Shown: positions 49,600 to 63,630 of the stretch, piece after piece
How positions within the stretch are numbered: position 1 is the first letter of the stretch
Layout of the letters: every line of letters begins with the position of its first letter
IMG/VR virus record: IMGVR_UViG_3300044641_009805
Coordinates: 1 to 64,000 of that record
DNA length: 64,000 nucleotides
Direction: 5' to 3' (one strand)
The notes under the pieces: generated by a model
What the model was told of the DNA's origin: nothing
What the model saw: the letters and a program-made list of their open reading frames with translations, nothing else
The model's database searches: none
Translations under genes and position numbers: made by a program

Positions 49600-49609
49600 G
49601 TGAGTGCAA

Positions 49610-51310: not shown

Positions 51311-51387
51311 AGATACATCCTATCACAGGTGGTGTATACTTTGCACCGGTCCCGAAAAAAAATCTCAAGAGAAAGATAGTTATATTG

Positions 51388-51567
51388 ATGAAGGGCCTCA
51401 GGTCATCCGAGTCGTGGAGGACGTTTCTTGCAGGATTCCTGTTGGGGTACCTGGCCGCCTGGGGGTTCCACTGGGCTACCACCTTCTACGCGTGGGGTAT
51501 ACCTACCCATCATCACATTCCAGGTCTCACCCCCGAGCCTCCTGCCGCGGAGGGCCATGGACGATAA
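51388..51567 (+). CDS. small membrane protein
   Basis: FLAGFLLGYLAAWGF TM helix. Confidence 0.45.
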   Translation: MKGLRSSESWRTFLAGFLLGYLAAWGFHWATTFYAWGIPTHHHIPGLTPEPPAAEGHGR

Positions 51568-51817
51568 ATCCTGCAAGAAGTGTGCGGAACGGGAGGAGGC
51601 GTGGGACATGCTCTTCCAGGTGAAGGATATGTTGGCATCCGTAGACACCATGATCTATCAGGCCACCGAGGCAGGATTGGACCAGGGTCGCATCGTAGGA
51701 CTCCTTGAGGCCGCCACGGCCCTGGAAAAAGCCGGATATGGGGAACTGGCTGACATTATTCGCAAGTTAATCCAGGAGGACGTGATGATCCTCGGGAAGC
51801 ACGACGGAGAAGCCTAG
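51557..51817 (+). CDS. hypothetical protein
   Basis: MDDKSCKKC after GGAGG RBS. Confidence 0.55.
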   Translation: MDDKSCKKCAEREEAWDMLFQVKDMLASVDTMIYQATEAGLDQGRIVGLLEAATALEKAGYGELADIIRKLIQEDVMILGKHDGEA

Positions 51818-52014
51818 AGTCCCGACAGGTTCTCGAACGTTTCCGAGACCCGTCCCATCATGGACACCGCGTCGACGAGGCTCATGATCCGGCTTTCTTC
51901 TCCGACCTTCACGTGGATTCGTCCGTGATTCGAGACGGAGAAGACGAGATCGCCCAGTTCGTAGGCGGTGGTCCAACGTTCGAGACGGGAGGCTAGATCG
52001 ATGACTTTGAACAT
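51814..52014 (-). CDS. hypothetical protein
   Basis: Preceded by a 36-nt leaderless promoter (52015-52050). Confidence 0.6.
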   Translation of the reverse strand: MFKVIDLASRLERWTTAYELGDLVFSVSNHGRIHVKVGEESRIMSLVDAVSMMGRVSETFENLSGL

Positions 52015-52059
52015 GGTGTCAGGGTATCATGTCCTGTCAGGACATTGCACCGAGATTTG

Positions 52060-52146
52060 CGGAGAAGGAGAGATTCGAACTCCCGGTGGGCTTTCACCCA
52101 CGACGGTTTTCTAAACCGTTGCCATCGACCACTCGGCCACTTCTCC
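52060..52146 (-). tRNA. tRNA-Ser(AGA)
   Basis: Stem ACGGT/ACCGT, loop TT-AGA-AA, long variable arm, G73. Confidence 0.85.
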
Positions 52147-52147
52147 A

Positions 52148-52223
52148 TGGAGCCTTCTGTCAGAATCGAACTGACGACAGGCAGTTTACAAAACTGCTAC
52201 TCTACCAACTGAGTTAAGAAGGC
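52148..52223 (-). tRNA. tRNA-Thr(TGT)
   Basis: Cloverleaf with CCA. Confidence 0.9.
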
Positions 52224-52224
52224 T

Positions 52225-52298
52225 TGGTGGACCCGGTGAGAATCGAACTCACAAGTGCGCCGTGCAAAGGCGCCAGTTTCCCATTAGCTTACAGGCCC
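52225..52298 (-). tRNA. tRNA-Ala(TGC)
   Basis: G3.U70, CCA. Confidence 0.9.
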
Positions 52299-52332
52299 GA
52301 CTTTTCTATATATTCATTCACATAAGTTTTTG

Positions 52333-52419
52333 CGGAAAGAGAAGGATTCGAACCTTCGGTAAGTTTTCACCTACGTGTGCTTAGCAAGCACATGCCTTAG
52401 GCCACTCGGCCATCTTTCC
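52333..52419 (-). tRNA. tRNA-Ser(GCT)
   Basis: Long variable arm, loop TT-GCT-AA. Confidence 0.9.
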
Positions 52420-52424
52420 ATTCG

Positions 52425-52498
52425 TGGAACGTGGTGGATTCGAACCACCGACCTTCTCCTTATCAGAGAGACTATCTAACCAACTGATATAACGTTCC
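52425..52498 (-). tRNA. tRNA-Ile(GAT)
   Basis: Loop CT-GAT-AA. Confidence 0.9.
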
Positions 52499-52503
52499 TC
52501 TAG

Positions 52504-52585
52504 TGGGGCATGATGGACTCGAACCACCGAAGTCTTTGACAGCTGATTTACAGTCAGCCCCCTTTGCCGCTCGGGACAATACCCC
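52504..52585 (-). tRNA. tRNA-Tyr(GTA)
   Basis: Loop CT-GTA-AA, variable arm. Confidence 0.9.
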
Positions 52586-52588
52586 ATG

Positions 52589-52663
52589 TGGAGCGGAGGA
52601 CGGGACTCGAACCCGCAACAATCAGTTTGGAAAACTGGGACTCTACCATTGAGTTACCTCCGC
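52589..52663 (-). tRNA. tRNA-Gly(TCC)
   Basis: Loop TT-TCC-AA, U73, CCA. Confidence 0.9.
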
Positions 52664-52703
52664 AAGCTTTTCTACTATACAACCTTTACGTGATTTGTAT
52701 CGG

Positions 52704-52778
52704 TGGCTGGGGAACAGGGACTCGAACCCCAATTCGCGGATTCAAAGTCCGCTGTCCTAACCATTGAACGATTCCCCA
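52704..52778 (-). tRNA. tRNA-Gln(TTG)
   Basis: Loop CT-TTG-AA, CCA. Confidence 0.9.
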
Positions 52779-52779
52779 G

Positions 52780-52856
52780 TGGCGTCCTTGAGAGGGCTCG
52801 AACCTCTGACCCGTTGCTTAGAAGGCAACTGCTCTATCCAACTGAGCTACAAGGAC
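52780..52856 (-). tRNA. tRNA-Arg(TCT)
   Basis: Loop CT-TCT-AA, CCA. Confidence 0.9.
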
Positions 52857-52859
52857 ATG

Positions 52860-52933
52860 GGCTCCGGGGGTTGGGATCGAACCAACGACCGGGCGGTTAA
52901 CAGCCGCCAGCTCTGCCGCTGAGCTACCCCGGA
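52860..52933 (-). tRNA. tRNA-Asn(GTT)
   Basis: Loop CT-GTT-AA. Confidence 0.9.
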
Positions 52934-52976
52934 AAAACCTCCACCCCGACCTGCAGGGTGGAGGCAGTCACAGCAA

Positions 52977-53234
52977 TCAGCGACGACGCGTTGGGCGCTC
53001 TACTGGTCGAACCTCTGCAAAGTAGGCTGAGTAACCGTCTGGGCGACGATAGTTGATGTTCGACGCGCATGACTGCGCCTCCTCGCGGGTGTCGAATGTC
53101 GTGGCCTCATCGAACGTACCCCAGACGCCTTGAACTCGACCGCTGTACGTTGGCCGGGTAAGGAAGCGGCGGCTGTTGGCCTCACGAACGACGTATGCTG
53201 TGATTGTGCTGTTGTTCTTGTTTGTCATGATCAT
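52977..53234 (-). CDS. hypothetical protein
   Basis: ORF with WG..DEA..F.TREEA motif. Confidence 0.6.
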   Translation of the reverse strand: MIMTNKNNSTITAYVVREANSRRFLTRPTYSGRVQGVWGTFDEATTFDTREEAQSCASNINYRRPDGYSAYFAEVRPVERPTRRR

Positions 53235-53427
53235 ATGGTATTCTTTCTTTTTTTGTTTTACAAGCGGGTCATGCGATTAGTTGCATGACGAAATTTTTTG
53301 GAGGATGGTTACTGTCCCGATGTGTGGCCCGGGAGGTCACCTGCTTATAATAGGAGCTTTCCTCGCGACGCCGGGGTCCACAGCTGCAAGATATATCTAA
53401 GTCTCCAGTATTCGTCGTTCGTGGAGA

Positions 53428-53503
53428 TGGTGGGTCCGGTGGGGTACGATCCCACAACTTATCGCTTAAAAGGCGACTACTCTACCAATTGAGTTACGGA
53501 CCC
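53428..53503 (-). tRNA. tRNA-Lys(TTT)
   Basis: Loop CT-TTT-AA, CCA; atypical T-loop. Confidence 0.85.
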
Positions 53504-53513
53504 GTAACAACAA

Positions 53514-53723
53514 TCAATCTTCTGACCAAGAGATGACTTCGGTCAGAGAATTGAGAACCTCTTTTTCAATTTCTGATTTGATCGTATCGCTGCTCGGCGA
53601 TTCGGCGTACTTGAATGCTCGATTCCAACCGCGATGGATTCCATCCTCCACCGCACGAGAGATAATCACGTATGTGTTGATCTTCAGTTCTGCACGGGGG
53701 TGAAGTCGTCTTGTGAGCTTCAT
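53514..53723 (-). CDS. hypothetical protein
   Basis: MKLTRR..AVEDGI..GWNRAFKY. Confidence 0.55.
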   Translation of the reverse strand: MKLTRRLHPRAELKINTYVIISRAVEDGIHRGWNRAFKYAESPSSDTIKSEIEKEVLNSLTEVISWSED

Positions 53724-53730
53724 TGTTGTG

Positions 53731-53806
53731 TGGTGCCTACCGTGGGATTCGAACCCACCCTGTATCGATTTTGAGTCGACTGCCTCTGCCACTGGGCTAC
53801 GTAGGC
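53731..53806 (-). tRNA. tRNA-Leu(CAA), short variable arm
   Basis: Loop CT-CAA-AA, A73, CCA. Confidence 0.85.
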
Positions 53807-53849
53807 GTGTTGTTTGGATGTTCTTAATCTACCCCATCGGGGTATCTTT

Positions 53850-54338
53850 TTACACCGTCCGAATCATATTCGGATCATCAAGGAGATATTTGTTCTGTCC
53901 GACGAGGACTGTGCGGAATGCACGGTCAACAACATTACCTTCGACATGCGAAGAGCCTGCTGAACGCTTCATCTTGACGGTGGTCATGCCGAGGTACACT
54001 GCGAACGTTCCTTGAGGAAGTTGCTCACCGCCAGGGATGTTTGCATACGTCACCGGCCCCCGCATGGTCAGAATGGGCGTTCCTTCTGATTTCTTCAAGA
54101 CAGGAAGCGGGAAGCCAGGAGATGACACTACCTTGGCCGCTGTGGCGAAGGTAATGGGCGATCCTTGGTTGATCTCGTCCCACGCCACCCGAGCGGCATC
54201 ACTCATCGGAGGTTCAAGGTAGAACCATGGCTCATTGGTCACGCGAGTGATGCCGCTCGGGCGGGGGCGTCGAGGAGCCTTCTTGACCGCGGGTGTCGCA
54301 GACGGATTGGTCCACGTGATCTTCGGCCTGGGCTTCAT
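53850..54338 (-). CDS. hypothetical protein
   Basis: 36-nt leaderless promoter upstream. Confidence 0.6.
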   Translation of the reverse strand: MKPRPKITWTNPSATPAVKKAPRRPRPSGITRVTNEPWFYLEPPMSDAARVAWDEINQGSPITFATAAKVVSSPGFPLPVLKKSEGTPILTMRGPVTYANIPGGEQLPQGTFAVYLGMTTVKMKRSAGSSHVEGNVVDRAFRTVLVGQNKYLLDDPNMIRTV

Positions 54339-54377
54339 GGTCCAATGGTATCCTATTGGACTTTGACTTTACACTGG

Positions 54378-55001
54378 TCAATCTTTTTTCTTGGGTTTCA
54401 TGCCTTTAGACTTCATGTAGGCCGCGAGGATGACATCACGTTTTTTCTGGGGGGCAGAGGCCCATTGCCATAGGATGGAATTCTCGATATTTTTCAGGCG
54501 TCCTTCTAGGTCCCCTGCGACCTTCTCCAGTCTGGTCACCGCCGCCATGGATGCCTCAGGTAGGTCCATGCCTAGCTCTAGTGCGACGGCCACGATCTCG
54601 TCGATGGACCCGTCCGCCATGGCTGCTGCAGCCCTCCTGTAGAGTTCCGACTTGGCTACATCTCCACCGGTCTTGTCAGGGTGGGTGGCGACGGCGATCT
54701 TCTTCCAAAGAGCTTTTATTTCGTCTGGGATTTCTGGATCTTCACGCGTCGGAAGATCGGGTTCAGAGGTATGATCCCCTTCGGTCCGATCTTCGACGAC
54801 GGTCGTGGCAGGGCTGGGAGGCGCAGGCGAGGCGGGTTGTTCAGGAGGTTCTTCTGTGTCAGCTACTTTCGAAAGTTCTTCCATGAACTGTTTGGTGATG
54901 TCGTCCATCGTTTCTTCGTGGTCTTCGATTTCGAGGCGAAGATGTTCCACCTTCAACGTCAGGCTTTTCCACTTGCGTTTGCCGTTGCCCTTCATGGGCA
55001 T
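54378..55001 (-). CDS. J-domain (DnaJ-like) protein
   Basis: IKALWKKIAVATHPDKTGG. Confidence 0.75.
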   Translation of the reverse strand: MPMKGNGKRKWKSLTLKVEHLRLEIEDHEETMDDITKQFMEELSKVADTEEPPEQPASPAPPSPATTVVEDRTEGDHTSEPDLPTREDPEIPDEIKALWKKIAVATHPDKTGGDVAKSELYRRAAAAMADGSIDEIVAVALELGMDLPEASMAAVTRLEKVAGDLEGRLKNIENSILWQWASAPQKKRDVILAAYMKSKGMKPKKKD

Positions 55002-55023
55002 AAATATTCATGAAAGAATTATT

Positions 55024-55584
55024 CTAGGGGTGGCTCTCGAAATCTGGGTCTTTTAGAGCCCACCGCATGTAGGACTTGATGAACTTTGATTTCAGTTCAT
55101 TCCAACGCATGTCGTTGATCTCTATGTTCAATTTCTTGGCGAGTTTGCGGCCGCGGTGCCATGCCTCAAATTCTTCTTCGATGACAGCGCAACGGTGGAT
55201 GAACTTGCCCTTGACGGCTGGATCATAAATCGAAGGGTAGCCTAAGGTGAACCTTGGATTGGTCGTCCCGTCGCCTGATCCTACGAGGAGGTGACCACAC
55301 TCGTGGAGGAGGATGAAGAGTTGGTTCTCGTATGATTGAGTGGAGTTGACGTAAATCTTTTTTTCGTCAGACACGAAGGATCCTGCTTCACGTCTGTTGG
55401 TAAATTCTACTTCTATTTTTCGGGAGGCACACCATGCGACAACGAGGTTTAAACTCGCAGAGGATGTTATATCTACATCCAAACGGGCCCGAGCCTTGGG
55501 CTCGGCGGCAGGATCCTTTGACCTCTGCTTTTCATACCGGGCCCAGGCTCGTTCCTCCCAGAGTCCGCGCTGGAAGGATGGCAT
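55024..55584 (-). CDS. HExxH zinc metallopeptidase (ImmA/IrrE-like)
   Basis: ILLHECGH..EEEFEAW. Confidence 0.7.
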   Translation of the reverse strand: MPSFQRGLWEERAWARYEKQRSKDPAAEPKARARLDVDITSSASLNLVVAWCASRKIEVEFTNRREAGSFVSDEKKIYVNSTQSYENQLFILLHECGHLLVGSGDGTTNPRFTLGYPSIYDPAVKGKFIHRCAVIEEEFEAWHRGRKLAKKLNIEINDMRWNELKSKFIKSYMRWALKDPDFESHP

Positions 55585-55588
55585 GTGT

Positions 55589-56707
55589 TCACTTCTTCTT
55601 CTTCGGCGTCGTTACCGACTTCGTATCTGCCGGGGTGAGGGCCTTGGCGGCTTCGCCCTTGTCGACACCGAAGACCGAGAGGATGTGGTTGACACACCAC
55701 TTGTGGACCGACTTGGCGAGCTCGAGGTTGTTGACCCCGCCGGCCGTGAGCTTTGACCAGGCCGCCACTCGGAGCTCCGCGGGGAGGTCACCCATGAAGT
55801 CTCGGAGGTTGGCACCTTGGTTGTCGTCGAGAACCTTCAGGTTCTTCGTGACGTAGTCGGCTACCTTCTCGATGGAGACGTTGAGCTTCTCCTGACCGAG
55901 CTTGGCGATCTTCGACTTGACCTTAGCGTAGCCCTCGATGATCTCCTCACCGGTGACCTGGGCGTCGATCGTCTTGACGTAGCCGTGGAAGGCGATGGTC
56001 GCCTCCGTACCGACGTAACCGAGACACATCGGGTAGAAGAGGGCGTCATCCGGGAGGTCCGCGACCCCGTTGGAGACCAGAGCGTGGGACAGACGTTCCC
56101 AGCTGCGGCGGCTGGGGGAGACGGCCGAGGCCTCGCCACCCTTGGGCGGGTCGAGCCACTTCTCGTTGCCGGCGATGAAGGTGATGATGTTCTCGTGGAT
56201 GGCCCCGGACTCCTTGGCCCAAGTGAGCCAGTCCTGCGTGTCCGGCGTCAGGTCGATGGCCCAGAAGCGATCGAGGAGCGCAGGGTCCATCTCGTTGACC
56301 GAGTAGGCCGCCGAGGAGTTGATGGCCGCGTAAACGCGGGTCTGCGGGTGGAGCTTCCAGCCGTTGAGCTCACGGTCGAGGACGACCTGGAAGGCGGCCT
56401 GCATGACCTCGGGGGTGGCACGGTTGAGCTCGTCGAGGAACAGGGCCACCGGCTTCTTGCAGGCGTTCTTGTACCACTCCGGCGGGTTGAACCGCGTGAC
56501 CTCGCCGTCCGTGGACGGGAGACCGATCATGTCGCCTTCGCTCATCTGTGAGAGGCGGCGGTCGATGACCTCGAGACCGAAGCCCTTGGCCACCTGGCGG
56601 ACGACCTGGGACTTACCGATGCCGTGGTTGCCACGGAGGAGGACCGAGGTCTCGACGGGGAGCTTGGAGGAGACCTTGAGGAACGTGCGGACGGACATGG
56701 TGGTCAT
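55589..56707 (-). CDS. MoxR/dynein-related AAA+ ATPase
   Basis: GNHGIGKS, LFLDELNRA, AAIN, MDPALLDRF, SRRSWE. Confidence 0.88.
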   Translation of the reverse strand: MTTMSVRTFLKVSSKLPVETSVLLRGNHGIGKSQVVRQVAKGFGLEVIDRRLSQMSEGDMIGLPSTDGEVTRFNPPEWYKNACKKPVALFLDELNRATPEVMQAAFQVVLDRELNGWKLHPQTRVYAAINSSAAYSVNEMDPALLDRFWAIDLTPDTQDWLTWAKESGAIHENIITFIAGNEKWLDPPKGGEASAVSPSRRSWERLSHALVSNGVADLPDDALFYPMCLGYVGTEATIAFHGYVKTIDAQVTGEEIIEGYAKVKSKIAKLGQEKLNVSIEKVADYVTKNLKVLDDNQGANLRDFMGDLPAELRVAAWSKLTAGGVNNLELAKSVHKWCVNHILSVFGVDKGEAAKALTPADTKSVTTPKKKK

Positions 56708-56836
56708 TGCGTTGTTTCCTTGTTAGGAGGTGATGGTTAGATACTACCAGGATGTCTGCGGACTTTGCACAGCTTCTCAAAAAAAGTTTCGACGAAGGGA
56801 TCCAGTCTGGATGAGGACCCCAGGTCGAGATGGTGG

Positions 56837-57514
56837 TCACCCCACGGCTGCGATGGGAGATGACTCGTTCGAGAGGGGCTCTTGGATCTGGAGGACCTCA
56901 ACATCGCTGGTGAACAGGTACACGGGACGCTTGGCACCGGGGACGTTGACGTAACACCGAATCCGCTGTGCACGATCGACCGTACCGAACTTGCCGACGA
57001 ACCGTGGATCACCACCAATGATTCGGACCTTGGCACCTGCCACGACTCGCTGGCCGAGGGCTCGTTCCGTGGCCTTCGCCCTGTTGAAGTGCTGGAGGTG
57101 GAGCGCAAGGGCCATCGTCTGCTCTGCAGAGAAGTTCGTCGTTGCCTCGTCGAACAAGCGCTGAACCTCGTTCTGCATCGCAGGCAACTTTGCCGCAGCC
57201 GTCTCGATCTTCTTCATGTGGACGGGCTTCTTACCTGAAGTTGCCTCTGCCTTCTCCTCACGGCGCTTCTGGCGCTCTGCGTCACGGACTGCCTTGGCTG
57301 CCTCGCGGGCTGCCTTCAGAGCCTCTGTCTTCTGCGACTTCGCGACCTCAGGATGCGTTTCCTTCTTTGCCTTAGGCTGCTTCGCGGGTGCATCGGCCTC
57401 CGTGGCGGGCTCCTCGCTTGCCTGGCGGGCTGCCTTGCGGGCCTTAGCGGCGGCGAGCGCCTTGTCGATGGCCGAGAGCTTCGTGTCGAGGTTCGTGTCA
57501 TTCGTGGTCTGCAT
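56837..57514 (-). CDS. Lys/Ala-rich protein with C-terminal KOW/SH3-like domain
   Basis: GAKVRIIGG..FVGKFGTV. Confidence 0.6.
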   Translation of the reverse strand: MQTTNDTNLDTKLSAIDKALAAAKARKAARQASEEPATEADAPAKQPKAKKETHPEVAKSQKTEALKAAREAAKAVRDAERQKRREEKAEATSGKKPVHMKKIETAAAKLPAMQNEVQRLFDEATTNFSAEQTMALALHLQHFNRAKATERALGQRVVAGAKVRIIGGDPRFVGKFGTVDRAQRIRCYVNVPGAKRPVYLFTSDVEVLQIQEPLSNESSPIAAVG

Positions 57515-57622
57515 GATGTAATCCTTTCCGTGGGTTAGGCTGTTTGCCTGTTGATGTTTCTGTTATACCTTGTTGGCCGAGAACTTTACACTGACGTTTT
57601 TTCTTTTTTTTCTTCCGAGAAT

Positions 57623-57832
57623 TCAGCTGGGCTTGTTGCGGTCAGACAGGAGGCGTTTCGCCTCACCTGCTCCTGCTTTCAATCCTCCCCCGAGGCCTGC
57701 CCCGAGTGCGCCGATCTTGGTCTTGATTCCGAAGAGAAACATCTTGACCTTCAAGAACGCCAGCTGAACGTAGGTCTTGGTGACGAGCGGGATGTAGAAG
57801 AACAACCAGATGAGACGTTTGAGAAACTGCAT
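57623..57832 (-). CDS. small hypothetical protein
   Basis: ORF only. Confidence 0.4.
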   Translation of the reverse strand: MQFLKRLIWLFFYIPLVTKTYVQLAFLKVKMFLFGIKTKIGALGAGLGGGLKAGAGEAKRLLSDRNKPS

Positions 57833-57906
57833 GAAGTTTTTTCTTGTTGGAGGAATGTTGTAACTAGTTGCAATGAAAGGGGTAGGTTACCCTACCCCGT
57901 GGATGA

Positions 57907-58671
57907 TCAGTCGTTGTAGCTGATGACGCCCTTCTCGTAGAGTCCCTTCTTCTCGAGGCCGAGGATGAAGGTCTTGCCGGAGCAACCGAACCGGTTCTTC
58001 TGCACCTCGAAGAGGCGCTCACCGAAGGTCTCCGAGTTCTTCTTGTCGTCGATGTAGAGGTGGGCGTGGGCATCCACCGTGTGCTTGATCTGTTGCTTGC
58101 CGGCGAACTCGCCACCCTTGGTGACCTGGCCGATGATGATGGCCACGCCGAACGTCTCCTTGCACCAGTTGGTGATCATCTCAGTGGCGCGAACCTGGCT
58201 CATCGAGTTGGTGAAGCCGTCCTTATACTTGCCGTCGTCCAGCGTCTGGAGCGAATCGACGACGATGAAGACCTGCTTACCGGGGTTCTTCTTACGCAGC
58301 TCGTCGCCGTGCTTGAGGATGTCCGAGACGAGCGTGTCCTGGCCGGCGACGAAGCCGTGCTTCATCTCGAGGCGCTTGGCCACCTTGCGAACCTGGAAGA
58401 GCGACTCCTCGCCGGTGTTGAAGAGGCAGATGTTGCCTGCGCCGGTGATGGCGTCCGCGAGTTGGAGGCTGAGAGTCGTCTTACCGGCGCCGGGGGTACC
58501 GGTGAAGAGGAGGGCCGTGGAAGGCGTCATGCCCTCACCACCCATGGCATCGTCGAAGAACTTGACGCCGGTGCGAACCGTGCGCTCGAGCTGGGCGGGG
58601 ACCTCGAGGTCGAGGATGTTGGTGCCGTTCTTCCAGGACTTGAGGCCGACGTTCATCTTCATCTGCGACAT
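57907..58671 (-). CDS. radA: RadA/Sms-like RecA-fold ATPase (ATPase core only)
   Basis: GTPGAGKTT, TGEES..QV, VVDSLQTL, IGQVTKGG.FAG, H.VD, KNRFG. Confidence 0.85.
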   Translation of the reverse strand: MSQMKMNVGLKSWKNGTNILDLEVPAQLERTVRTGVKFFDDAMGGEGMTPSTALLFTGTPGAGKTTLSLQLADAITGAGNICLFNTGEESLFQVRKVAKRLEMKHGFVAGQDTLVSDILKHGDELRKKNPGKQVFIVVDSLQTLDDGKYKDGFTNSMSQVRATEMITNWCKETFGVAIIIGQVTKGGEFAGKQQIKHTVDAHAHLYIDDKKNSETFGERLFEVQKNRFGCSGKTFILGLEKKGLYEKGVISYND

Positions 58672-58760
58672 GGCGTTCTCCTTGGTGGCTGGCTTCCGAA
58701 CCAGCCGATAGATCAGTTATACCAGGATTCGTCTGAGCTTTGCACCGCGGCGATGCAATT

Positions 58761-58976
58761 TCAGAAGTGTTTGTAGACGATGTCGGACGCGATGTCCTGA
58801 TCGAGGCCTTCGTCGACGAGGTACATCTCGACGCTGAAGAGGTCGTCGGTCCGTCCGAAGAGCTTCTTGAGACCGCGGACCCCTGAGTCGAAGAGCTTTG
58901 CGTCGACCGTACGGCCGGCCGCGTCCATGGACTTGACGATCATCTGACCGGCGGAGAGCTTGGTGGCGTTCTTCAT
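58761..58976 (-). CDS. small early hypothetical protein
   Basis: MKNATK start set by the 36-nt promoter. Confidence 0.6.
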   Translation of the reverse strand: MKNATKLSAGQMIVKSMDAAGRTVDAKLFDSGVRGLKKLFGRTDDLFSVEMYLVDEGLDQDIASDIVYKHF

Positions 58977-59020
58977 GGTCCTAGTATATCCTTTCGACGA
59001 GGAACTTTGCACTGGGCGGA

Positions 59021-59034
59021 TGCAACTAGTTGCA
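59021..59034. promoter_or_regulatory. perfect palindrome TGCAACTAGTTGCA (candidate operator)
   Basis: Also at 49605-49618; variants at 57858 and 53269. Confidence 0.5.
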
Positions 59035-59104
59035 AACCACATTGGACCCCTGGAATTGATAGGTAATCTCCTCCAGGGGTGGAGGGGCAGAAGCCCCCGA
59101 TAGG

Positions 59105-59320
59105 TCAGGCGACCGAGTGCGTTTCGATCGTGACGTAGTGGCCGGACTTGGCCGACCAGGAGTGACCGCGGCCGGGCTTGTACTCGTGGGAGGCGATGTC
59201 CTCGTCCGTCTCCATGTAGTTCTTGGCTGCTGCGAGGGCCGCCTCCTCCGTGGCGTGGACGGAGACGAGGTTGTGCGAGGCGTAGTGCTCACCGGCGAAG
59301 ACGATGTATACCTTGTCCAT
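59105..59320 (-). CDS. small early hypothetical protein
   Basis: MDKVYIV..SVHATEEAA; 36-nt promoter. Confidence 0.65.
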   Translation of the reverse strand: MDKVYIVFAGEHYASHNLVSVHATEEAALAAAKNYMETDEDIASHEYKPGRGHSWSAKSGHYVTIETHSVA

Positions 59321-59424
59321 GTCCTTATCCTACCTTTTCTGCAGAGAACTTTGCACTGAGTGGAGAGTTTTTTTGCCCCGCGGGGAGCGGGGGGGCGGGC
59401 CGAAGGCGCCCGCCCCGAGGGGTC

Positions 59425-59631
59425 TCACTGAGCAGGGGTGAAGGTGCCTTGGTTGACGTAGAGCCCCTCGAGTGCCTCGACGTCGTACAGGTTGAAGAGC
59501 TTGTCGTGGTACTTCGCGTCGGGCATGAAGACGAGCTCACCGCGGGAGGTGGTGACGTAGCCCGTCATGGTGCCCATCTTGGGGAGCTGGGGGTGAACGA
59601 AGGTGCCCTTGGTCTTGGTGGCGTTGTTCAT
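59425..59631 (-). CDS. small early hypothetical protein
   Basis: 36-nt promoter. Confidence 0.6.
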   Translation of the reverse strand: MNNATKTKGTFVHPQLPKMGTMTGYVTTSRGELVFMPDAKYHDKLFNLYDVEALEGLYVNQGTFTPAQ

Positions 59632-59967
59632 GGTCTTATATTACCCTTTCCTCTGTGAACTTTGCACTTTTGCGAGAACTTTTTTCTTTTTTTTCTCTCT
59701 CTTTACCTTGCCGCTCCGTTCCTTTCCATGGTTCCAATATAACATGCGGCGGCCGTACTTTGCACTTTGCTCTCACTTTTTTCTGTGAAAGTAACTTTCA
59801 ACAAGAGCGGTACTTTTGCTCAACCGCCGGGGCAAATAAGGGGCACGGCCGCCGTAGGCTCAGGATGCCCTTGGAAGGCTTTTCTCGAGTCGAATGAGGT
59901 TACCCCTTGGCTCAAGGTGAGGCCTCTCCAAGGGCATCCTGGCTCTTTTACAAATTGTTTGGGGGCT

Positions 59968-60003
59968 GTGCAAAGTCGCTACCGAGTTTGGTATATTGGA
60001 CCC
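59968..60003 (+). promoter_or_regulatory. leaderless promoter GTGCAA-N18-TATATT-N6-ATG (type example)
   Basis: Same architecture at 60319, 60604, 60847, 61488, 62214, 63595 and others. Confidence 0.75.
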
Positions 60004-60303
60004 ATGGAACACAACAAGGCAGCAAGCTCCTTCGTCGTCCAAATCGTCCACCTCCTCGAGGTCGACCGCAGCGGAGCTCCCCGCTTCTCCCCTGCGCAGA
60101 TCCTCGCCGTAACGGGGTCGATCGACGAGGCACGTTCGATCGCGCACCGCTTCCCCAAAGGCCCGACGGCAGACGTCCAGATCCTCGAGGTCGTCCCGCC
60201 GGTCGACGTCGGCGGTGTCGGGCTCCGGTTCCTCACCCCAATCCGCCGGGCGGTCATCGAACCCAAGGCCAAACCGGTCCGGAAGGCGCGCAAAGCCGCC
60301 TGA
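60004..60303 (+). CDS. small early hypothetical protein
   Basis: Start set by the promoter. Confidence 0.6.
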   Translation: MEHNKAASSFVVQIVHLLEVDRSGAPRFSPAQILAVTGSIDEARSIAHRFPKGPTADVQILEVVPPVDVGGVGLRFLTPIRRAVIEPKAKPVRKARKAA

Positions 60304-60354
60304 AAATCTGCGGGAATAGTGCAAAGTTCATCCACGAAAGGATATACTAAGGTC

Positions 60355-60603
60355 ATGGACATCCAGAGCATCTCTCCCTCGCAGGTGGTCAAGGCGTACG
60401 TCGGCAAGGTCGGCTGCATGTGCGGCTGCAAGGGCAAGTACTACGGCCATGCCGCAGGCATCGAGATCGACCGGGCCGACCCGAAGATGGTGACCAAGAT
60501 CCTCCGGACCATCCAGGCCAATGAGGAGGCGGTCGAGGTGGATGACGGCATCCTCGCCTACGAGGCCAAGGGCAAGTCCTGGGTCGTCTATCTCTCGGCC
60601 TGA
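60355..60603 (+). CDS. small early hypothetical protein (GCMCGCKG motif)
   Basis: Y.GK.GCMCGC.G.Y. Confidence 0.65.
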   Translation: MDIQSISPSQVVKAYVGKVGCMCGCKGKYYGHAAGIEIDRADPKMVTKILRTIQANEEAVEVDDGILAYEAKGKSWVVYLSA

Positions 60604-60639
60604 GTGCAAAGTCAGCCTCGAACCTGATAGGGTTGAACT

Positions 60640-60864
60640 ATGGATCTAGAAGAGTTCCTCCAGTTGGCTTTGGAACCTCATGGTCAAGGTCAGCGGCGCG
60701 GGCAAGCTTTCATGAACGTTGTGTCCACTCTCCACCCGCATCTCTACCGAGACCTCCTTGCGGTTCAGCTCGATGCCTTCTACGACGACTCCAAGATGTG
60801 GCCGGCCGTGGAGTGGATCACGCGGAACGCACATAACTACTTCTCTGTGCAAAGTTCAACCTAG
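60640..60864 (+). CDS. small early hypothetical protein
   Basis: R.GQAFMN..P..DAFYDD. Confidence 0.65.
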   Translation: MDLEEFLQLALEPHGQGQRRGQAFMNVVSTLHPHLYRDLLAVQLDAFYDDSKMWPAVEWITRNAHNYFSVQSST

Positions 60865-60882
60865 AAAAGGTAGGATAGAACC

Positions 60883-61161
60883 ATGATCAATCTGTTCATC
60901 GGGTGGGGCGTCTCGGCCTTGATGGGGACCGGAACTCTCTACCTCATCCTCATGGTCTTCGCGCTGGCCTTCCCGCGGCTTTTCCGAGTGGGCTACTGGC
61001 TTTTCATGTTGCCCATCATGTCGCTAGGACCTGCCATCCTTGGGTGGCTCTTCTTCGGCTTCTTCCTCGGCTGGAACACCGCAACATTCATGTTGACTCT
61101 CGCAGGTGGCACGGCCTTCGGGGTTGCCTTTTGTCTTTGGTCGGATCCTAAACAAGATTGA
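60883..61161 (+). CDS. small membrane protein
   Basis: Three hydrophobic helices. Confidence 0.65.
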   Translation: MINLFIGWGVSALMGTGTLYLILMVFALAFPRLFRVGYWLFMLPIMSLGPAILGWLFFGFFLGWNTATFMLTLAGGTAFGVAFCLWSDPKQD

Positions 61162-61170
61162 GGATAAGCC

Positions 61171-61389
61171 ATGAACTCTCGACTCAAAGAAGCATTGCTG
61201 TTCTACATCAAGGGAACGCTGACAGACCCCGCTGGGGTGGATGAGATGGTGATGTTGGCTTTGTACAAACTTCGTGGCGAGTCAACTGACATGGGCCTTC
61301 GTCAAGACCTCGACGCGCTGATCGCTCGGGTCGAGAAGAGAGGCGAAAGGTACCACTTGGCGTCTCCCGAACGGATGAGTGTGGCTTAA
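61171..61389 (+). CDS. hypothetical protein
   Basis: GAGG RBS. Confidence 0.55.
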   Translation: MNSRLKEALLFYIKGTLTDPAGVDEMVMLALYKLRGESTDMGLRQDLDALIARVEKRGERYHLASPERMSVA

Positions 61390-61523
61390 TGGCTACCTTG
61401 GTCTTGAAGATCATCTGCTGCTTCGTGATGGCTGTGCTCTTCCCCTTGGGGGTTGTAGCCACCCTGGACAACAAATAGCTCGTGGCAGTGCAAAGTTCCA
61501 GCTTGACGTGATAGGATCTAACC

Positions 61524-62135
61524 ATGAACGACGACACCATCCTGCCGCCCCCGTTCGAGGAACCCGAGTTTGAGTCGATCTCCTCGATCCTTGCGAACGA
61601 GGCGAAAGAGAAGGCCCGCCTCGCGCAGAAGCCCATCATTGACCTCCTCGAGGATGCCATCGAGTTGGACGAGGACGGTGTGCCCGTGTTCACGATCCCT
61701 CCAGGCGAGCGAGTCATCATCGAGCGTGTGGCCTCTGTTCTTCCTGGGAAGCAGTGGCTCGACACGAAGGTGTACACAGTGGAGACCATCGACGGAGTCA
61801 CCGGTAACCTGATGCTCTGGGACGACGCAGGCAAGTGTCACGCCATGTCGAACTACCTCACCGCGCCAAAGGTTGGCTACCGGTTCAAGGTCCCGCCGGC
61901 CAAGGGTGGTCTGCAGATTCAAGGTCGTAAGCGTGGTCGGCCCCGTAAGGTGGTGCCCCTTGGCCAGGAGAAGCCGGTAGAGCCTGTCCAACTGGACGAG
62001 AATGGTCAACCGATCAAGAAGAAGCGTGGGCGTCCGCCGGGGACCAAGAACCGACCGAAGGAGATCGTGGTTGCGGAACGTAAGGCCAAGGCAGAGATGA
62101 AGGCCAAGAAGAAAGCAAAGCGTAAGAAGGCTTGA
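61524..62135 (+). CDS. AT-hook DNA-binding protein
   Basis: RKRGRPRK and KKRGRPPG; acidic N-terminus. Confidence 0.7.
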   Translation: MNDDTILPPPFEEPEFESISSILANEAKEKARLAQKPIIDLLEDAIELDEDGVPVFTIPPGERVIIERVASVLPGKQWLDTKVYTVETIDGVTGNLMLWDDAGKCHAMSNYLTAPKVGYRFKVPPAKGGLQIQGRKRGRPRKVVPLGQEKPVEPVQLDENGQPIKKKRGRPPGTKNRPKEIVVAERKAKAEMKAKKKAKRKKA

Positions 62136-62142
62136 TGGCCAT

Positions 62143-62216
62143 GCCGCTGTAGCTCAGACGGATAGAGCAGATCATTCCTAACGATCAGGCCACAGGTTCG
62201 ACTCCTGTCAGCGGTG
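62143..62216 (+). tRNA. tRNA-Arg(CCT)
   Basis: Loop TT-CCT-AA; T-loop GTTCGACTC. Confidence 0.85.
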
Positions 62217-62249
62217 CAAAGTTAACCTCAAACAAGGTAAGGTAGAACC

Positions 62250-63092
62250 ATGGACACGCAAGAGACGCTTCAACGGGCAGCTCAGCTATTGCGAGTAGCT
62301 GACGCACTCATCATCACGGCTGGAGCAGGAATGGGGGTGGATAGCGGTCTGCCCGATTTCCGAGGAGATGAAGGTTTCTGGAACGCCTATCCGGCGTACA
62401 AGCACCTTGGTCTCACCTTCTCCGACATGGCCAACCCGAGGTGGTTTGAGGATAACCCGGCGTTGGCATGGGGATTCTATGGTCACCGGCTCAACCTGTA
62501 CCGAGCGACCCAACCTCACGCAGGCTTCGACGTTCTTAAGCGTCTTGCTCGAGGCATGAAGCATGGTGCCTTCGTCTTCACGTCTAACGTGGATGGTGCC
62601 TTCCAGAAGGCTGGTTTCGACCCTGATCGTATCGTGGAATGCCATGGATCCATCCATCACGTCCAGTGTACAAAGGGATGTGGCATCGGCATTCTGCCTG
62701 CAGAACGTGTTAAGATCGACGTGGATTCCAAGACGTTTGAGGCCCAGAGCCCGCTACCCGCCTGCCCGCGCTGCGGAGAGCTCTTGAGGCCAAACATCCT
62801 GATGTTTGGCGATCCGGGATGGAATTTCTCTCGTGCCGATGAGCAAGACGAGAGGATGACGGAGTGGGTCCGGACCTTAGCAGATCGTCATGTCGCAACC
62901 GTTGTCATCGAGTTGGGCGCAGGCAAACACATCCCCAGCGTGCGGGCGAAGAGTTCTTTGTTGTCAAACAAACTCAATGCTCCACTCATTCGCATCAATA
63001 CTCGAGATTCCGATGGTTTCCCCAATACGTTGTCGTTGCCGATGAAGGCAAAGGAGGCTCTCATCGAACTGGAAATCTTGTCAAAATCTTAA
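62250..63092 (+). CDS. Sir2-family NAD-dependent deacylase
   Basis: TAGAGMGVDSGLPDFRG, TSNVDG, ECHGS, CxxC..CxxC, RPNILMF. Confidence 0.92.
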   Translation: MDTQETLQRAAQLLRVADALIITAGAGMGVDSGLPDFRGDEGFWNAYPAYKHLGLTFSDMANPRWFEDNPALAWGFYGHRLNLYRATQPHAGFDVLKRLARGMKHGAFVFTSNVDGAFQKAGFDPDRIVECHGSIHHVQCTKGCGIGILPAERVKIDVDSKTFEAQSPLPACPRCGELLRPNILMFGDPGWNFSRADEQDERMTEWVRTLADRHVATVVIELGAGKHIPSVRAKSSLLSNKLNAPLIRINTRDSDGFPNTLSLPMKAKEALIELEILSKS

Positions 63093-63183
63093 CACCACGC
63101 GGTGCAAACCTTAGACCCATCGTGATATACTGATTTCAACGCTGGCCACTAACCACAACCTCTTGACCTTGAAAGAAAAAGAA

Positions 63184-63375
63184 ATGAGCAACGAGAACAG
63201 CAACATCAGCACGGACACCTGCGACGACTGCGGACGACATGGCCCCGGGACACGTTACGTGCAGGACGACTCGACGACATACTTCATCTGCATGTCGTGT
63301 GGGCCAAAGCAATTCGAAAAGACCGCACGTCGGGACATCGACTCATGGCTGGCAGGAGGTGACTTCGGGGGATGA
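63184..63375 (+). CDS. small Zn-ribbon protein
   Basis: CDDC..CMSC. Confidence 0.55.
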   Translation: MSNENSNISTDTCDDCGRHGPGTRYVQDDSTTYFICMSCGPKQFEKTARRDIDSWLAGGDFGG

Positions 63376-63626
63376 GCTGGAATTACCGAGTTGTCCGCAA
63401 GATCCTCTCTGGTGAAGGATACACCACAACTCAGTACGGAATCCATGAGGTCTACTACGATGACGATCACGTACCGACTTCATGTACCGTCAACCCTGTC
63501 ACCCCTTATGGTGAGTCCGAGGACGAGTTGGCCCAAGACGTGCGGCATTACGCCTCGGCCTTGGAGAAGCCGGTTCTTGATTACGATTCGATCGGTGTAA
63601 AGTCAGAGTCGAACGTGGTAGAGTAG
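63372..63626 (+). CDS. conserved phage hypothetical protein
   Basis: MSWNYRVV..YGIHEVYYD..AL.KPVL. Confidence 0.7.
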   Translation: MSWNYRVVRKILSGEGYTTTQYGIHEVYYDDDHVPTSCTVNPVTPYGESEDELAQDVRHYASALEKPVLDYDSIGVKSESNVVE

Positions 63627-63630
63627 AACC

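What the first reader, a model, noticed from the sequence alone, without database searches (positions are those of the whole stretch)
51311..63630. Leaderless early regulon: -35 box exactly 36 nt upstream of the start codon
Seen: GTG(C/T/A)AA-N18-TAnnnT-N6-start occurs at + strand 832, 5728, 31798, 59968, 60319, 60604, 60847, 61488, 62214 and 63595. On the - strand the -35 begins at 51346, 52050, 54374, 59012, 59356, 59667 and 59765. In all 17 the start codon is exactly 36 nt from the first G, and most have no recognisable Shine-Dalgarno at canonical spacing. pilY1 (11147) and groEL (37335) show the same -10-N6-ATG spacing. Established: this spacing places the TSS on the start codon (leaderless mRNA), and such mRNAs can be translated by 70S ribosomes and are disfavoured by IF3. 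Inference: nearly every early gene is a stand-alone leaderless cassette, which could keep it translated during shut-off of SD-led host translation.
Basis: partly seen in the sequence, partly recalled or inferred. Interest (0 to 1): 0.75.

Follow-up and report, generated by a model that had tools for sequence, protein, structure and literature searches.

The report
Promoters fused directly to start codons
An uncultured 278-kb T4-like giant phage carries about fifty copies of one conserved promoter, placed so that transcription should begin on the ATG of a small gene. That would make a GC-rich block of probably early genes into leaderless messages, but no transcript ends could be mapped.

Summary
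All 17 sites are as described. The strict pattern occurs 18 times in the window, against 0.05 expected, and 47 times in the 278-kb genome.

The sites fall into two groups:
- **Class A:** GTGCAAAGT-N15-TAnnnT-nnnACC-ATG, in a GC-rich island at 48-80 kb.
- **Class B:** a GTGAAA variant near the ends of the record.

Twenty-eight related metagenomic phage contigs carry hundreds of non-identical copies with the same 18-nt spacer and the same 6-nt gap to ATG.

The anatomy is that of a bacterial sigma-70-type promoter:
- G at -14
- an A-tract at -54 to -49
- C at -1 and A at +1

The same element also drives a tRNA array and several genes with Shine-Dalgarno leaders, so it acts in transcription. Leaderless mRNAs are therefore the best explanation.

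Transcription starts could not be mapped, because the public RNA runs are held only as undirected contigs.

- The cassettes are not stand-alone. Stop codons abut the next -35 and terminators are rare.
- "Early" and "host sigma-70" are inferred, not shown.
- The shut-off idea is speculative. The phage's own capsid gene and other genes outside the island use Shine-Dalgarno sites.

The closest known systems are T4-type PeSL cassettes, the -10-adjacent leaderless genes of Deinococcus-Thermus, and Thermus phage phiYS40.

The parts
51308..51346 (-). Promoter-ATG fusion (GTGCAAAGT...TAGGAT-N6-ATG). It drives ORF 50003-51310, a DUF2201 metallopeptidase/VWA protein of 435 aa.
   Evidence: orthologues at 57-60% identity keep the motif and its spacing
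52012..52050 (-). Promoter-ATG fusion (GTGCAATGT...TACCCT). It drives ORF 51814-52014 (66 aa).
53820..53855 (-). Promoter of the same architecture (GTGTAAAAA-N15-TAGATT-AAGAAC-A). The predicted +1 lies 13 nt before tRNA-Leu, the first gene of the tRNA array at 52059-53806.
   Evidence: this shows the element acts in transcription and is not a translation signal
54336..54374 (-). Promoter-ATG fusion. It drives ORF 53850-54338 (162 aa).
56732..56770 (-). Class A promoter with a 27-nt leader that carries an SD (AAGGAA). It drives the MoxR-like AAA_5 ATPase ORF 55589-56707. The +1 context ACC|ATC is kept.
57553..57591 (-). Class A-type promoter (-10 TATAAC) with a leader of about 41 nt that carries an SD. 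It drives ORF 56837-57514 (225 aa).
58707..58745 (-). Class A-type promoter (GTGCAAAGC, -10 TATAAC) with a leader of about 38 nt that holds a hairpin and the SD AAGGAG. It drives the KaiC/RecA-like ATPase ORF 57907-58671.
58974..59012 (-). Promoter-ATG fusion. It drives ORF 58761-58976 (71 aa).
59318..59356 (-). Promoter-ATG fusion. It drives ORF 59105-59320 (71 aa).
59629..59667 (-). Promoter-ATG fusion. It drives ORF 59425-59631 (68 aa).
59727..59765 (-). Promoter fused to an 8-codon mini-ORF (59703-59729). It lies in tandem, 98 nt upstream of the 59667 promoter, and is the outermost leftward promoter of the divergent pair.
59968..60006 (+). First rightward promoter-ATG fusion. It drives ORF 60004-60303 (99 aa).
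60319..60357 (+). Promoter-ATG fusion. It drives ORF 60355-60603 (82 aa). The stop codon of this ORF abuts the next -35.
60604..60642 (+). Promoter-ATG fusion. It drives ORF 60640-60864 (74 aa). The end of this ORF overlaps the next promoter by 18 nt.
60847..60885 (+). Promoter-ATG fusion. It drives ORF 60883-61161 (92 aa). An SD-led ORF (61171-61389) with no promoter of its own follows.
61488..61526 (+). Promoter-ATG fusion. It drives ORF 61524-62135 (203 aa). tRNA-Arg(CCT) at 62143-62217 follows.
62214..62252 (+). Promoter-ATG fusion. It drives the SIR2-family ORF 62250-63092 (280 aa).
   Evidence: the orthologue at 80% identity keeps the motif
63102..63140 (+). Promoter of the same type (GTGCAAACC...TATACT) with a leader of about 47 nt. 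It drives ORF 63185-63375 (63 aa, with two C-x2-C pairs).
63595..63633 (+). Promoter-ATG fusion (GTGTAAAGT). It drives ORF 63631-63765 (44 aa).
832..870 (+). Class B variant (GTGAAATCC...GTGATACAAT-N6-ATG). It drives ORF 868-1092 (74 aa).
5728..5766 (+). GTGTAA-type site with a GTG start. It drives the AAA ATPase ORF 5764-6762 (332 aa).
31798..31836 (+). GTGAAAAGT-type site. It drives ORF 31834-32172 (112 aa). Orthologues of this gene in related phages are SD-led instead.

Best explanation
The repeated 39-bp element is a two-part promoter read by bacterial RNA polymerase.

**Anatomy of the element**
- A -35-like GTGCAAAGT, followed by an almost invariant 18-nt spacer.
- G at -14, as in an extended -10.
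- A TAnnnT -10.
- A purine-rich stretch that ends in CC at -2 and -1.
- Often an A-tract at -54 to -49.

**How it works**
The element is fused to an ORF so that the expected +1 is the A of the ATG. Each such gene is then the first cistron of an mRNA with no 5' leader, and translation starts on the 5'-terminal AUG without a Shine-Dalgarno (SD) site.

The cassettes sit head to tail with almost no terminators. Transcripts are therefore nested and read through into the genes behind.

**Where it sits**
The block (48-80 kb) diverges leftward and rightward from about 59.8 kb. It is a GC-rich island with GC3 of 78%, inside an AT-rich T4-like giant phage.

**Inferred steps**
- It is probably the early, variable gene region, read by the host's primary sigma factor before the phage's own sigma-70-family factor and tRNAs take over.
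- The repeated promoter-ATG unit also serves as a recombination joint at which small genes are gained, lost and swapped between relatives, as PeSL cassettes do in T4-type phages.

**Shown:** the sequence architecture, its enrichment, its conservation, its use before a tRNA array and before SD-led genes, and indels at promoter copies.
**Inferred:** the exact +1, early timing, which sigma reads it, and the mode of translation.
For: **Enrichment and fixed geometry**
- 18 matches in the window against 0.05 expected.
- 47 of 62 promoter-like sites in the genome have a start codon at exactly N6 (p = 1.6e-49).
- Among class A-type sites counted with a stricter -35, the spacer is 18 nt in 36 of 39, and 32 of those 36 have the start at N6.

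**Conservation**
- 28 related IMG/VR contigs hold 387 such sites, 304 of them with ATG at N6. There are 217 unique 72-mers.
- Orthologues at 45-85% identity keep the motif and its spacing in 32 of 69 cases.

**Promoter-type features**
- G at -14 in 92% of sites.
- C at -1 in 86% and A at +1 in 91%.
- A-tract at -54 to -49: a run of five or more A in 24% of sites, against 2% in controls.

**Acts in transcription, not translation**
- The same element stands 13 nt before a tRNA array.
- It also stands before SD-led genes, with the ACC|A context kept.
- In relative L059 the same promoter carries an 11-17 nt SD leader.

**No RNA structure**
- No covariation in the spacer, and a mean folding z-score of +0.25.

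**Fits leaderless translation**
- 45 of 47 starts are ATG.
- No SD core of 5 nt or more.
- The first 30 nt of the ORFs fold weakly, -2.2 against about -6 kcal/mol further in.
- TANNNT placed 6-7 bp before an ORF is the experimentally shown leaderless promoter form in D. radiodurans (PMC12340547).

**Fits early timing**
- GC3 is 78% in these ORFs against 31% in structural genes. The phage tRNAs read codons that are 3-40 times commoner in the structural genes.

**Recombination at promoter copies**
- Contigs of relatives skip from 58995 to 59738 and from 62223 to 63183.
Against: - No transcription start was mapped. The only public RNA runs are stored as undirected contigs of related strains and gave no read ends. 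One 285-nt contig from an RNA library begins at 59962, 42 nt upstream of the predicted +1 at 60004. That could be DNA carry-over, read-through or a break in the assembly graph.
- The -35 (GTGCAA) matches TTGACA at only 3 of 6 positions and is invariant. That pattern fits a dedicated factor better than a general host sigma.
- The host is unknown, so its ability to translate leaderless mRNA is unknown.
- With no terminators, every gene but the first also sits inside longer transcripts. There, the AGGA or AAGG inside TAGGAT/TAAGGT lies 7 nt before the ATG and could serve as a weak SD.
- The counts from relatives are partly ascertained, because those loci were fetched with a pattern that already included N6-ACCATG.
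Confidence: 0.75

Rival explanations
1. The architecture and the leaderless outcome are the same, but host holoenzyme alone does not read the promoters. A phage-specified factor recognises the invariant GTGCAAAGT box. Candidates are the phage sigma-70-family protein working with a separate region-4-like protein, or a MotA-like activator that replaces -35 recognition. The genes would then be a middle class rather than immediate-early.
For: - GTGCAAAGT is invariant and a poor match to TTGACA.
- The phage encodes a sigma with regions 1.2 to 4.1 but no Pfam region 4. Its short C-terminus is conserved in orthologues down to 50% identity.
- A separate 104-aa Sigma70_r4 ORF exists at 119333-119647.
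- T4 middle promoters likewise pair a TAnnnT -10 with an activator box in place of a -35 (own knowledge).
Against: - Something must be transcribed by unmodified host polymerase first, and this is the only abundant promoter class placed before small ORFs of unknown function.
- Host-like GC3 (78%) in exactly these genes points to expression before the phage tRNAs are available.
- The sigma without region 4 fits better with the TATAAT promoters that lack a -35 and lie in the AT-rich regions.
- No AsiA homologue was found, though that search rang nowhere and so is uninformative.
Confidence: 0.2
2. The element works at the RNA level. It would be a cleavage site or a translation signal between cistrons of long transcripts that start far upstream, so its likeness to a promoter is incidental.
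For: - The cassettes are packed with gaps of 0-18 nt and almost no terminators, so long read-through transcripts must exist.
- 12 of 46 sites have AGGA or AAGG 7 nt before the ATG.
- One contig from an RNA library covers a whole promoter.
Against: - There is no conserved RNA structure or covariation.
- The conserved positions are those of a -35, an extended -10 G, a -10, a CA start and an upstream A-tract.
- The same element precedes a tRNA array and also SD-led genes at variable distances.
- The strongest conservation lies 28-36 nt before the ATG, too far upstream to contact a ribosome at the start codon.
Confidence: 0.04
3. The repeats are mainly recombination modules (mobile regulatory cassettes). 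The exact fusion to ATG is a by-product of how cassettes are copied and is not selected for leaderless expression. Transcription may start a few bases away and give very short leaders.
For: - Indels and gene swaps in relatives have their ends inside promoter copies.
- PeSL cassettes of T4-type phages set the precedent (PMC2839356, PMC4122927).
Against: - Copying alone would not hold the 6-nt gap across 217 distinct sequences and two promoter sub-types with different spacers. It would also not hold it in class B and in the TATAAT class, whose sequences are unrelated.
- Relatives that lost the fusion gained an SD leader, which points to selection on how translation starts.
Confidence: 0.1

Closest known systems
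PeSL (promoter-early stem-loop) cassettes in the variable regions of T4-type phages (Arbiol et al. 2010, PMC2839356; Comeau et al. 2014, PMC4122927)
   Same: - The phage is T4-like: capsid and portal match PHROG families, and tblastn of the capsid gives T4-type gp23 relatives.
- Many copies of one strong sigma-70-like promoter each precede a small ORF of unknown function in a variable block.
- Indels between relatives have their ends in promoter copies.
   Different: - There is no stem-loop terminator. Only 3 of 36 promoters have a significant hairpin, and stop codons abut the next -35.
- The promoter is fused to the ATG with no leader or ribosome-binding site.
- The -35 is GTGCAAAGT.
Leaderless genes with the -10 motif next to the ORF in Deinococcus-Thermus (PMC12340547) and, from my own knowledge, in Actinobacteria
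   Same: [quoted passage not shown] In D. radiodurans this was shown by experiment to be the promoter -10 of leaderless mRNAs.
   Different: - Those host genes mostly lack a -35 and the motif is degenerate. Here an invariant -35-like box at a fixed 18-nt spacing accompanies it.
- The setting here is a phage regulon of near-identical copies, not a genome-wide habit of a host.
Thermus phage phiYS40 leaderless programme (Sevostyanova et al. 2007, as summarised in PMC3594737)
   Same: A large myovirus in which a whole temporal class of transcripts is leaderless, linked to a proposed shift in initiation factors.
   Different: - In phiYS40 the middle and late transcripts are leaderless, and host IF2 rises while IF3 falls.
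- Here the leaderless block looks early. The capsid gene and other genes outside the island use SD sites, and the phage itself encodes an IF1 homologue.
- No expression data exist for this phage.
T4 middle promoters (MotA box plus TAnnnT -10, with AsiA sigma appropriation; own knowledge)
   Same: A TAnnnT -10 combined with a conserved, non-TTGACA box upstream, in a T4-like phage.
   Different: - The box sequence and its position differ: GTGCAAAGT at -36 to -28, against TGCTTtA centred at -30.
- No AsiA match was found, though that search was uninformative.
- T4 middle genes have leaders with SD sites.

Membership tests
sigma-70-type bacterial promoter | A -10 hexamer with T-12, A-11 and T-7 | tested here: met
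   TAnnnT was required by the search. The commonest forms are TATACT, TAAGGT and TAGGAT.
sigma-70-type bacterial promoter | A -35 hexamer close to TTGACA, 17 +/- 1 bp upstream of the -10 | tested here: inconclusive
   The spacing fits: 18 bp for GTGCAA, or 17 bp if read as TGCAAA, and it is nearly invariant. The sequence matches TTGACA at only 3 of 6 positions.
sigma-70-type bacterial promoter | Auxiliary elements: extended -10 TG, UP-type A-tract, pyrimidine at -1 and purine at +1 | tested here: met
   G at -14 in 92% of sites, with T at -15 in only 37%. C at -1 in 86% and A at +1 in 91%. A-tract at -54 to -49.
sigma-70-type bacterial promoter | Initiation by RNA polymerase holoenzyme at the predicted +1 | not testable with these tools
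   Read laying returned only undirected contigs and no molecule ends.
leaderless mRNA gene | The transcription start coincides with the start codon (5' UTR of 0 to a few nt) | tested here: inconclusive
   The geometry predicts it: the -10 is followed by 6 nt and then ATG. The RNA data could not show it.
leaderless mRNA gene | An AUG start and no SD upstream | tested here: met
   45 of 47 starts are ATG. No SD core of 5 nt or more was found; 12 of 46 have a 4-mer inside the -10 hexamer.
leaderless mRNA gene | The fused ATG is the true N-terminus of the protein | tested here: met
   tblastn alignments to orthologues start at residue 1-2 in most pairs, down to about 35-45% identity. There is no proteomic evidence.
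PeSL cassette of T4-type phages | A repeated strong early-type promoter before small ORFs in a variable region of a T4-type phage | tested here: met
PeSL cassette of T4-type phages | A stem-loop terminator joined to the promoter | tested here: not met
   Only 3 of 36 promoters have an upstream hairpin with z < -2, and the gaps to the upstream ORF are often 0-18 nt. The one clear terminator stands before the promoter at 75559.
PeSL cassette of T4-type phages | Indels and gene replacements between relatives have their ends in the cassettes | tested here: met
   Contig joints at 58995->59738 and 62223->63183. The same gene families sit behind different promoter copies in relatives.
T4 middle promoter (MotA/AsiA) | A MotA box (TGCTTtA centred at -30) and MotA and AsiA genes | tested here: not met
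   The box is GTGCAAAGT at -36 to -28. AsiA (PF09010) gave no match, but the control rang nowhere, so absence is not shown. MotA was not searched.

The most novel reading that the evidence does not exclude
A lineage of uncultured T4-like giant phages runs its whole first wave of expression through a 39-bp promoter-ATG adaptor, into which any ORF can be recombined with no ribosome-binding site. Together with a phage IF1, a sigma factor that lacks region 4, host-like codons in these genes and phage tRNAs for the rest, this would form a separate translation channel. Leaderless, 70S-type initiation would serve early proteins and SD-led initiation would serve late ones. The phage could tune that channel against the host.
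Probability: 0.15. Interest if true: 0.8.

Novelty: new variant of a known kind. Interest (0 to 1): 0.55.

Why it matters
Leaderless mRNAs are usually scattered through a genome or tied to a host lineage. Here about fifty near-identical promoter-start-codon fusions form one block, and the arrangement is conserved across a family of environmental giant phages.

- **A clean natural test set.** The block holds hundreds of sequence variants with fixed geometry. It can be used to ask what a leaderless promoter and a 5'-terminal AUG need.
- **A way for phages to add genes.** It suggests how new genes could be plugged in without evolving a ribosome-binding site.
- **A pointer to the host.** The unknown host is probably GC-rich and able to translate leaderless messages.
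- **A testable model of timing.** The island differs sharply in composition from the rest of the genome, and the phage also has its own tRNAs, an IF1 and a truncated sigma. Together these suggest temporal control that works on translation as well as transcription.

Without a cultured host or mapped 5' ends, this remains a prediction from sequence.

Tried and rejected
- **RNA evidence.** Seven public runs hold related sequence, but all are stored as undirected assembled contigs. Two runs labelled RNA are probably DNA. No molecule ends were reported, and the contigs break at promoter repeats. Nothing can be said about transcription starts. In X3 (RNA, oligo-dT), word depth falls to 0-1.2 across the divergent promoter gap (59585-59938). 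The motif is confined to a few phage-like contigs in them, and those contigs were probably binned by GC content.\n - The RpoD of G002 is of proteobacterial type and only 39% identical to the phage sigma.\n - TANAAT-N6-ATG is enriched in G002 (62 against 18) but not in G001 (28 against 32). This is a lead only.\n- **Factor searches.** IF3 gave no match. AsiA gave no match and the search was uninformative.\n- **Archaeal TATA/BRE reading.** I considered it because of the leaderless genes and the PrkA/SpoVR genes. I dropped it because the chaperonin scored as bacterial GroEL/GroL in tblastn, with all top hits annotated that way, the phage sigma is bacterial, and some phage genes carry SD sites.\n- **My own gene finder.** It under-calls the small GC-rich ORFs, so the genome-wide shares of SD-led and leaderless genes are rough. 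I do not rely on them.

Full report
**What the window is**

The window is the first 64 kb of a single 278,435-bp virus record. IMG/VR classes it as linear, and CheckV estimates it as about 84% complete.

- The capsid and portal match PHROG families. By tblastn the capsid gives T4-type gp23 relatives. The nearest are Microcystis phage Mel-JY01, Flavobacterium phage immuto and an uncultured 484-kb phage.
- It encodes a bacterial GroEL and a PrkA/DUF444/SpoVR trio, and 13 tRNAs lie in the window.
- No isolated phage is close at the DNA level.
- The host is unknown.

Every one of the 17 listed sites reads GTG(C/T/A)AA, 18 nt, TAnnnT, 6 nt, start codon.

- The strict pattern occurs 18 times in the window, against 0.05 in shuffles.
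- It occurs 47 times in the genome.
- Of 62 sites that have only the two promoter boxes at 18-nt spacing, 47 are followed by a start codon at exactly 6 nt. The binomial p is about 1e-49.

The sites form two groups:

- **Class A:** (c)(R)GTGCAAAGT-N15-TAnnnT-(A)(R)(R)ACC-ATG. It has about 35 strict copies between 51 and 76 kb.
- **Class B:** GTGAAAnnCCC...ATGATAnnAT-N6-ATG. It lies at 253-276 kb and at 0.8 kb, which would be one region if the record were circularly permuted.

Among class A-type sites counted with a stricter -35, the spacer is 18 nt in 36 of 39, and the gap to the start is 6 nt in 32 of those 36. Three more copies are fused to an ATG: 64180 and 71775 with a 17-nt spacer, and 68194 with a 7-nt gap. 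The latter two have TATATA in place of TAnnnT.

**It is a conserved feature of a phage family**

A scan of IMG/VR for GTGCAAAGT-N15-TANNNT-NNNACCATG found 53 stretches on 28 contigs, up to 298 kb long and with up to 16 copies per stretch.

- In those stretches, 387 sites have the two boxes and 304 of them have ATG at N6.
- 217 distinct 72-mers carry the full class A motif.
- These counts are partly ascertained, because the loci were fetched with the N6 pattern. The whole-genome counts for this record are not.
- Orthologues of the downstream genes at 45-85% amino-acid identity keep the motif and the exact spacing in 32 of 69 pairs.
- Where the fusion is absent, the orthologue often has an SD instead, as in L024, L042 and L051. 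In L059 the same promoter is followed by an 11-17 nt leader with AAGGTAGGA.

So the same gene families switch between leaderless and SD-led forms. A loss of the fusion goes with a gain of an SD.

**Why it is a promoter**

The conserved positions are those that RNA polymerase holoenzyme contacts:

- a -35-region box
- a fixed spacer of 17 or 18 nt
- G at -14 in 92% of sites, the G of an extended -10
- T-12, A-11 and T-7
- C at -1 (86%) and A at +1 (91%)
- an A-tract at -54 to -49, with a run of five or more A in 24% of sites against 2% of control windows in the same GC-rich DNA. This is where UP elements lie.

There is no base-pair covariation in the spacer, and the RNA would not fold better than shuffles (mean z +0.25).

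The element is also used where no start codon follows:

- At 53855(-) the predicted +1 lies 13 nt before tRNA-Leu, the first gene of the 12-tRNA array.
- At 56770(-), 57591(-) and 58745(-) it precedes leaders of 27-41 nt with clear SD sites, for a MoxR-like ATPase, a 225-aa protein and a KaiC/RecA-like ATPase. The ACC|A start context is kept.
- At 63102(+) it precedes a leader of about 47 nt.

This rules out a translation signal and makes an RNA-processing site unlikely.

**Why leaderless**

- With the -10 at -12 to -7, six more bases put +1 on the A of the ATG.
- TANNNT placed 6-7 bp before an ORF is the arrangement shown by mutagenesis and reporters to be the -10 of leaderless genes in Deinococcus radiodurans (PMC12340547).
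- The starts are ATG in 45 of 47 sites.
- No site has an SD core of 5 nt or more. Twelve of 46 have AGGA or AAGG, but only as part of TAGGAT or TAAGGT.
- The first 30 nt of the ORFs are A-rich and fold weakly, -2.2 against about -6 kcal/mol further in.
- Alignments to orthologues begin at residue 1.

The direct test failed. The RNA runs that hold this phage are kept only as undirected contigs of related strains, and no read ends were reported. One contig from an oligo-dT RNA library starts at 59962, upstream of the predicted +1 at 60004. I cannot tell DNA carry-over or read-through from a real upstream start.

- **The cassettes are not stand-alone.** The stop codon of one ORF abuts or overlaps the next -35, with a gap of 0-18 nt in about half of the consecutive pairs. 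Only 3 of 36 promoters have a significant upstream hairpin. The terminator scan is not above chance. Transcripts must be nested.
- **Other gene types are in the block.** It also holds SD-led and translationally coupled genes with no promoter of their own, such as 61171-61389 and 63372-63626.
- **The shut-off idea is untested.** Leaderless early genes escaping a block on SD-led translation has no support here. It sits badly with SD-led capsid and other genes outside the island.
- **A precedent exists for the general idea.** In Thermus phage phiYS40 most middle and late transcripts are leaderless, and IF2 rises while IF3 falls (PMC3594737).

**Timing and who reads the promoter (inference)**

The class A block is a GC island, 52-61% GC against 32-45% elsewhere.

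- GC3 is 78% in class A ORFs and 31% in structural genes.
- The phage tRNAs read TCT, ACA, AGA, AAA, CAA, GGA and TTG, which are 3-40 times commoner in the structural genes.
- This fits genes that must be translated with the tRNA pool of a GC-rich host before the phage tRNAs accumulate.
- The tRNA array itself sits in the island behind a promoter of the same type.

The phage also has a sigma-70-family gene at 78902-79735, just beyond the block.

- It has an rpoD-box region 2 and region 3, but no Pfam region 4.
- It ends in a short tail (...GxGLT) that is conserved in six orthologues down to 50% identity.
- A sigma of that kind suits a third promoter class. Perfect TATAAT with no -35 has an ATG-ORF 6-8 nt downstream at 16 of 187 sites, almost all in the AT-rich parts of the genome.

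My model is therefore:

1. Host primary sigma reads classes A and B.
2. The phage sigma reads the TATAAT class.

The invariant, non-consensus GTGCAAAGT box keeps open the alternative that a phage factor reads it. That could include the separate 104-aa Sigma70_r4 ORF at 119333-119647.

**Comparison with known systems**

- **PeSL cassettes** are the closest in genome biology. They are repeated early promoters in the variable regions of T4-type phages that mediate modular shuffling (PMC2839356, PMC4122927). Here, contigs of relatives likewise skip between promoter copies (58995->59738 and 62223->63183). The defining stem-loop is absent and the promoter is fused to the ATG, so I do not file this as a PeSL.
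- **Leaderless genes of Deinococcus-Thermus and Actinobacteria** are the closest in mechanism. They have the -10 next to the ORF. They differ in lacking a fixed -35 and in being a habit of the host.
- **phiYS40** is the phage precedent for a leaderless temporal class.
- **By contrast**, dRNA-seq found no leaderless transcripts in phiKZ (PMC8244752), and AR9 has 5' UTRs of 26-491 nt (PMC5312081).

**Verdict**

The feature is real, strongly non-random and conserved. It is best read as a regulon of sigma-70-type promoters fused to start codons, which would give leaderless mRNAs in the probable early region of an uncultured T4-like giant phage.

It is a new variant of known kinds, not a new kind. 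The key mechanistic step, +1 on the ATG, is predicted and not shown.

Noticed in passing
window 48000-64000, continuing to about 80 kb of the record (L001): A sharp GC island, 52-61% GC against 32-45% elsewhere. GC3 is 78% in the promoter-fused ORFs against 31% in structural genes. The 13 phage tRNAs read codons (TCT, ACA, AGA, AAA, CAA, GGA, TTG) that are 3-40 times commoner in the AT-rich structural genes. This suggests a GC-rich host and a hand-over of translation from host tRNAs to phage tRNAs.
   Followed up: partly
G000 78902-79735 (L065:1315-2148): A phage sigma-70-family gene with an rpoD box (YATWWVRQAI). It has regions 1.2 to 4.1 but no recognisable region 4.2, and ends ...ISMGEGLT. 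This short end is conserved in six orthologues down to 50% identity, so it is not a sequencing error. The next ORF (79967-80281, 104 aa) has no Pfam match.
   Followed up: partly
G000 119333-119647 (L066:1333-1647, + strand, inside a minus-strand structural block): A stand-alone 104-aa ORF that matches Sigma70_r4 (37 bits). It could supply the missing region 4 to the truncated phage sigma, or act as an anti-sigma or appropriator.
   Followed up: no
window 39717-39968 (+): A phage-encoded homologue of translation initiation factor IF1 (PF01176, 70 bits). No IF3 domain was found in the record. This is of interest next to a leaderless regulon, but no link was tested.
   Followed up: partly
window 2959(-), 19479(-), 30191(-), 42103(+), and about 12 more sites outside the window: A second leaderless-type class. 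Perfect TATAAT, often GTATAAT, with no -35 box lies 6-8 nt before an ATG-ORF. This holds for 16 of 187 TATAAT sites, against about 1 at other distances, and almost all are in AT-rich regions. The site at 30191(-) heads the DUF444-SpoVR-PrkA genes.
   Followed up: partly
window 25744-30191 (-): A PrkA kinase / SpoVR / DUF444 (YeaG-YeaH-YcgB type) trio carried by a phage, with strong Pfam scores (E 1e-111 to 1e-136).
   Followed up: no
window 62250-63092 (+); 50003-51310 and 55589-56707 (-): Among the promoter-driven genes are a SIR2-family protein, a DUF2201 metallopeptidase/VWA protein and a MoxR-like AAA_5 ATPase. In several metagenome strains the SIR2 gene is skipped (joint 62223->63183).
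   Followed up: partly
window 59703-59765 (-) and G000 69955-70017 (+): Two promoters of the class are fused to 8-codon mini-ORFs, and another promoter follows closely. They are tandem promoters or decayed cassettes.
   Followed up: no
L067 (JBBAUR010000072.1, labelled Bdellovibrionota MAG), G001:C9, G002:C270 and C261: Public metagenome-assembled bacterial genomes hold contigs of this phage family. One contig is 98% identical at protein level. The promoter motif is confined to those contigs. This is probably a binning artefact caused by the GC-rich island, and at most a weak hint about the host.
   Followed up: partly
It does have TAATAT-N6-ATG.
   Followed up: partly
G000 73175-73705 (L001:9175-9705): A class A-driven ORF of 176 aa holds collagen triple-helix repeats (PF01391, E 5e-20).
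   Followed up: no
G000 75500-75560 (L001:11520-11560): The one clear intrinsic terminator in the block (GGGGAGGACC-TTCG-GGTCCTCCCC followed by TTT) stands directly before the last class A promoter. It is the only place where the layout resembles a PeSL.
   Followed up: partly
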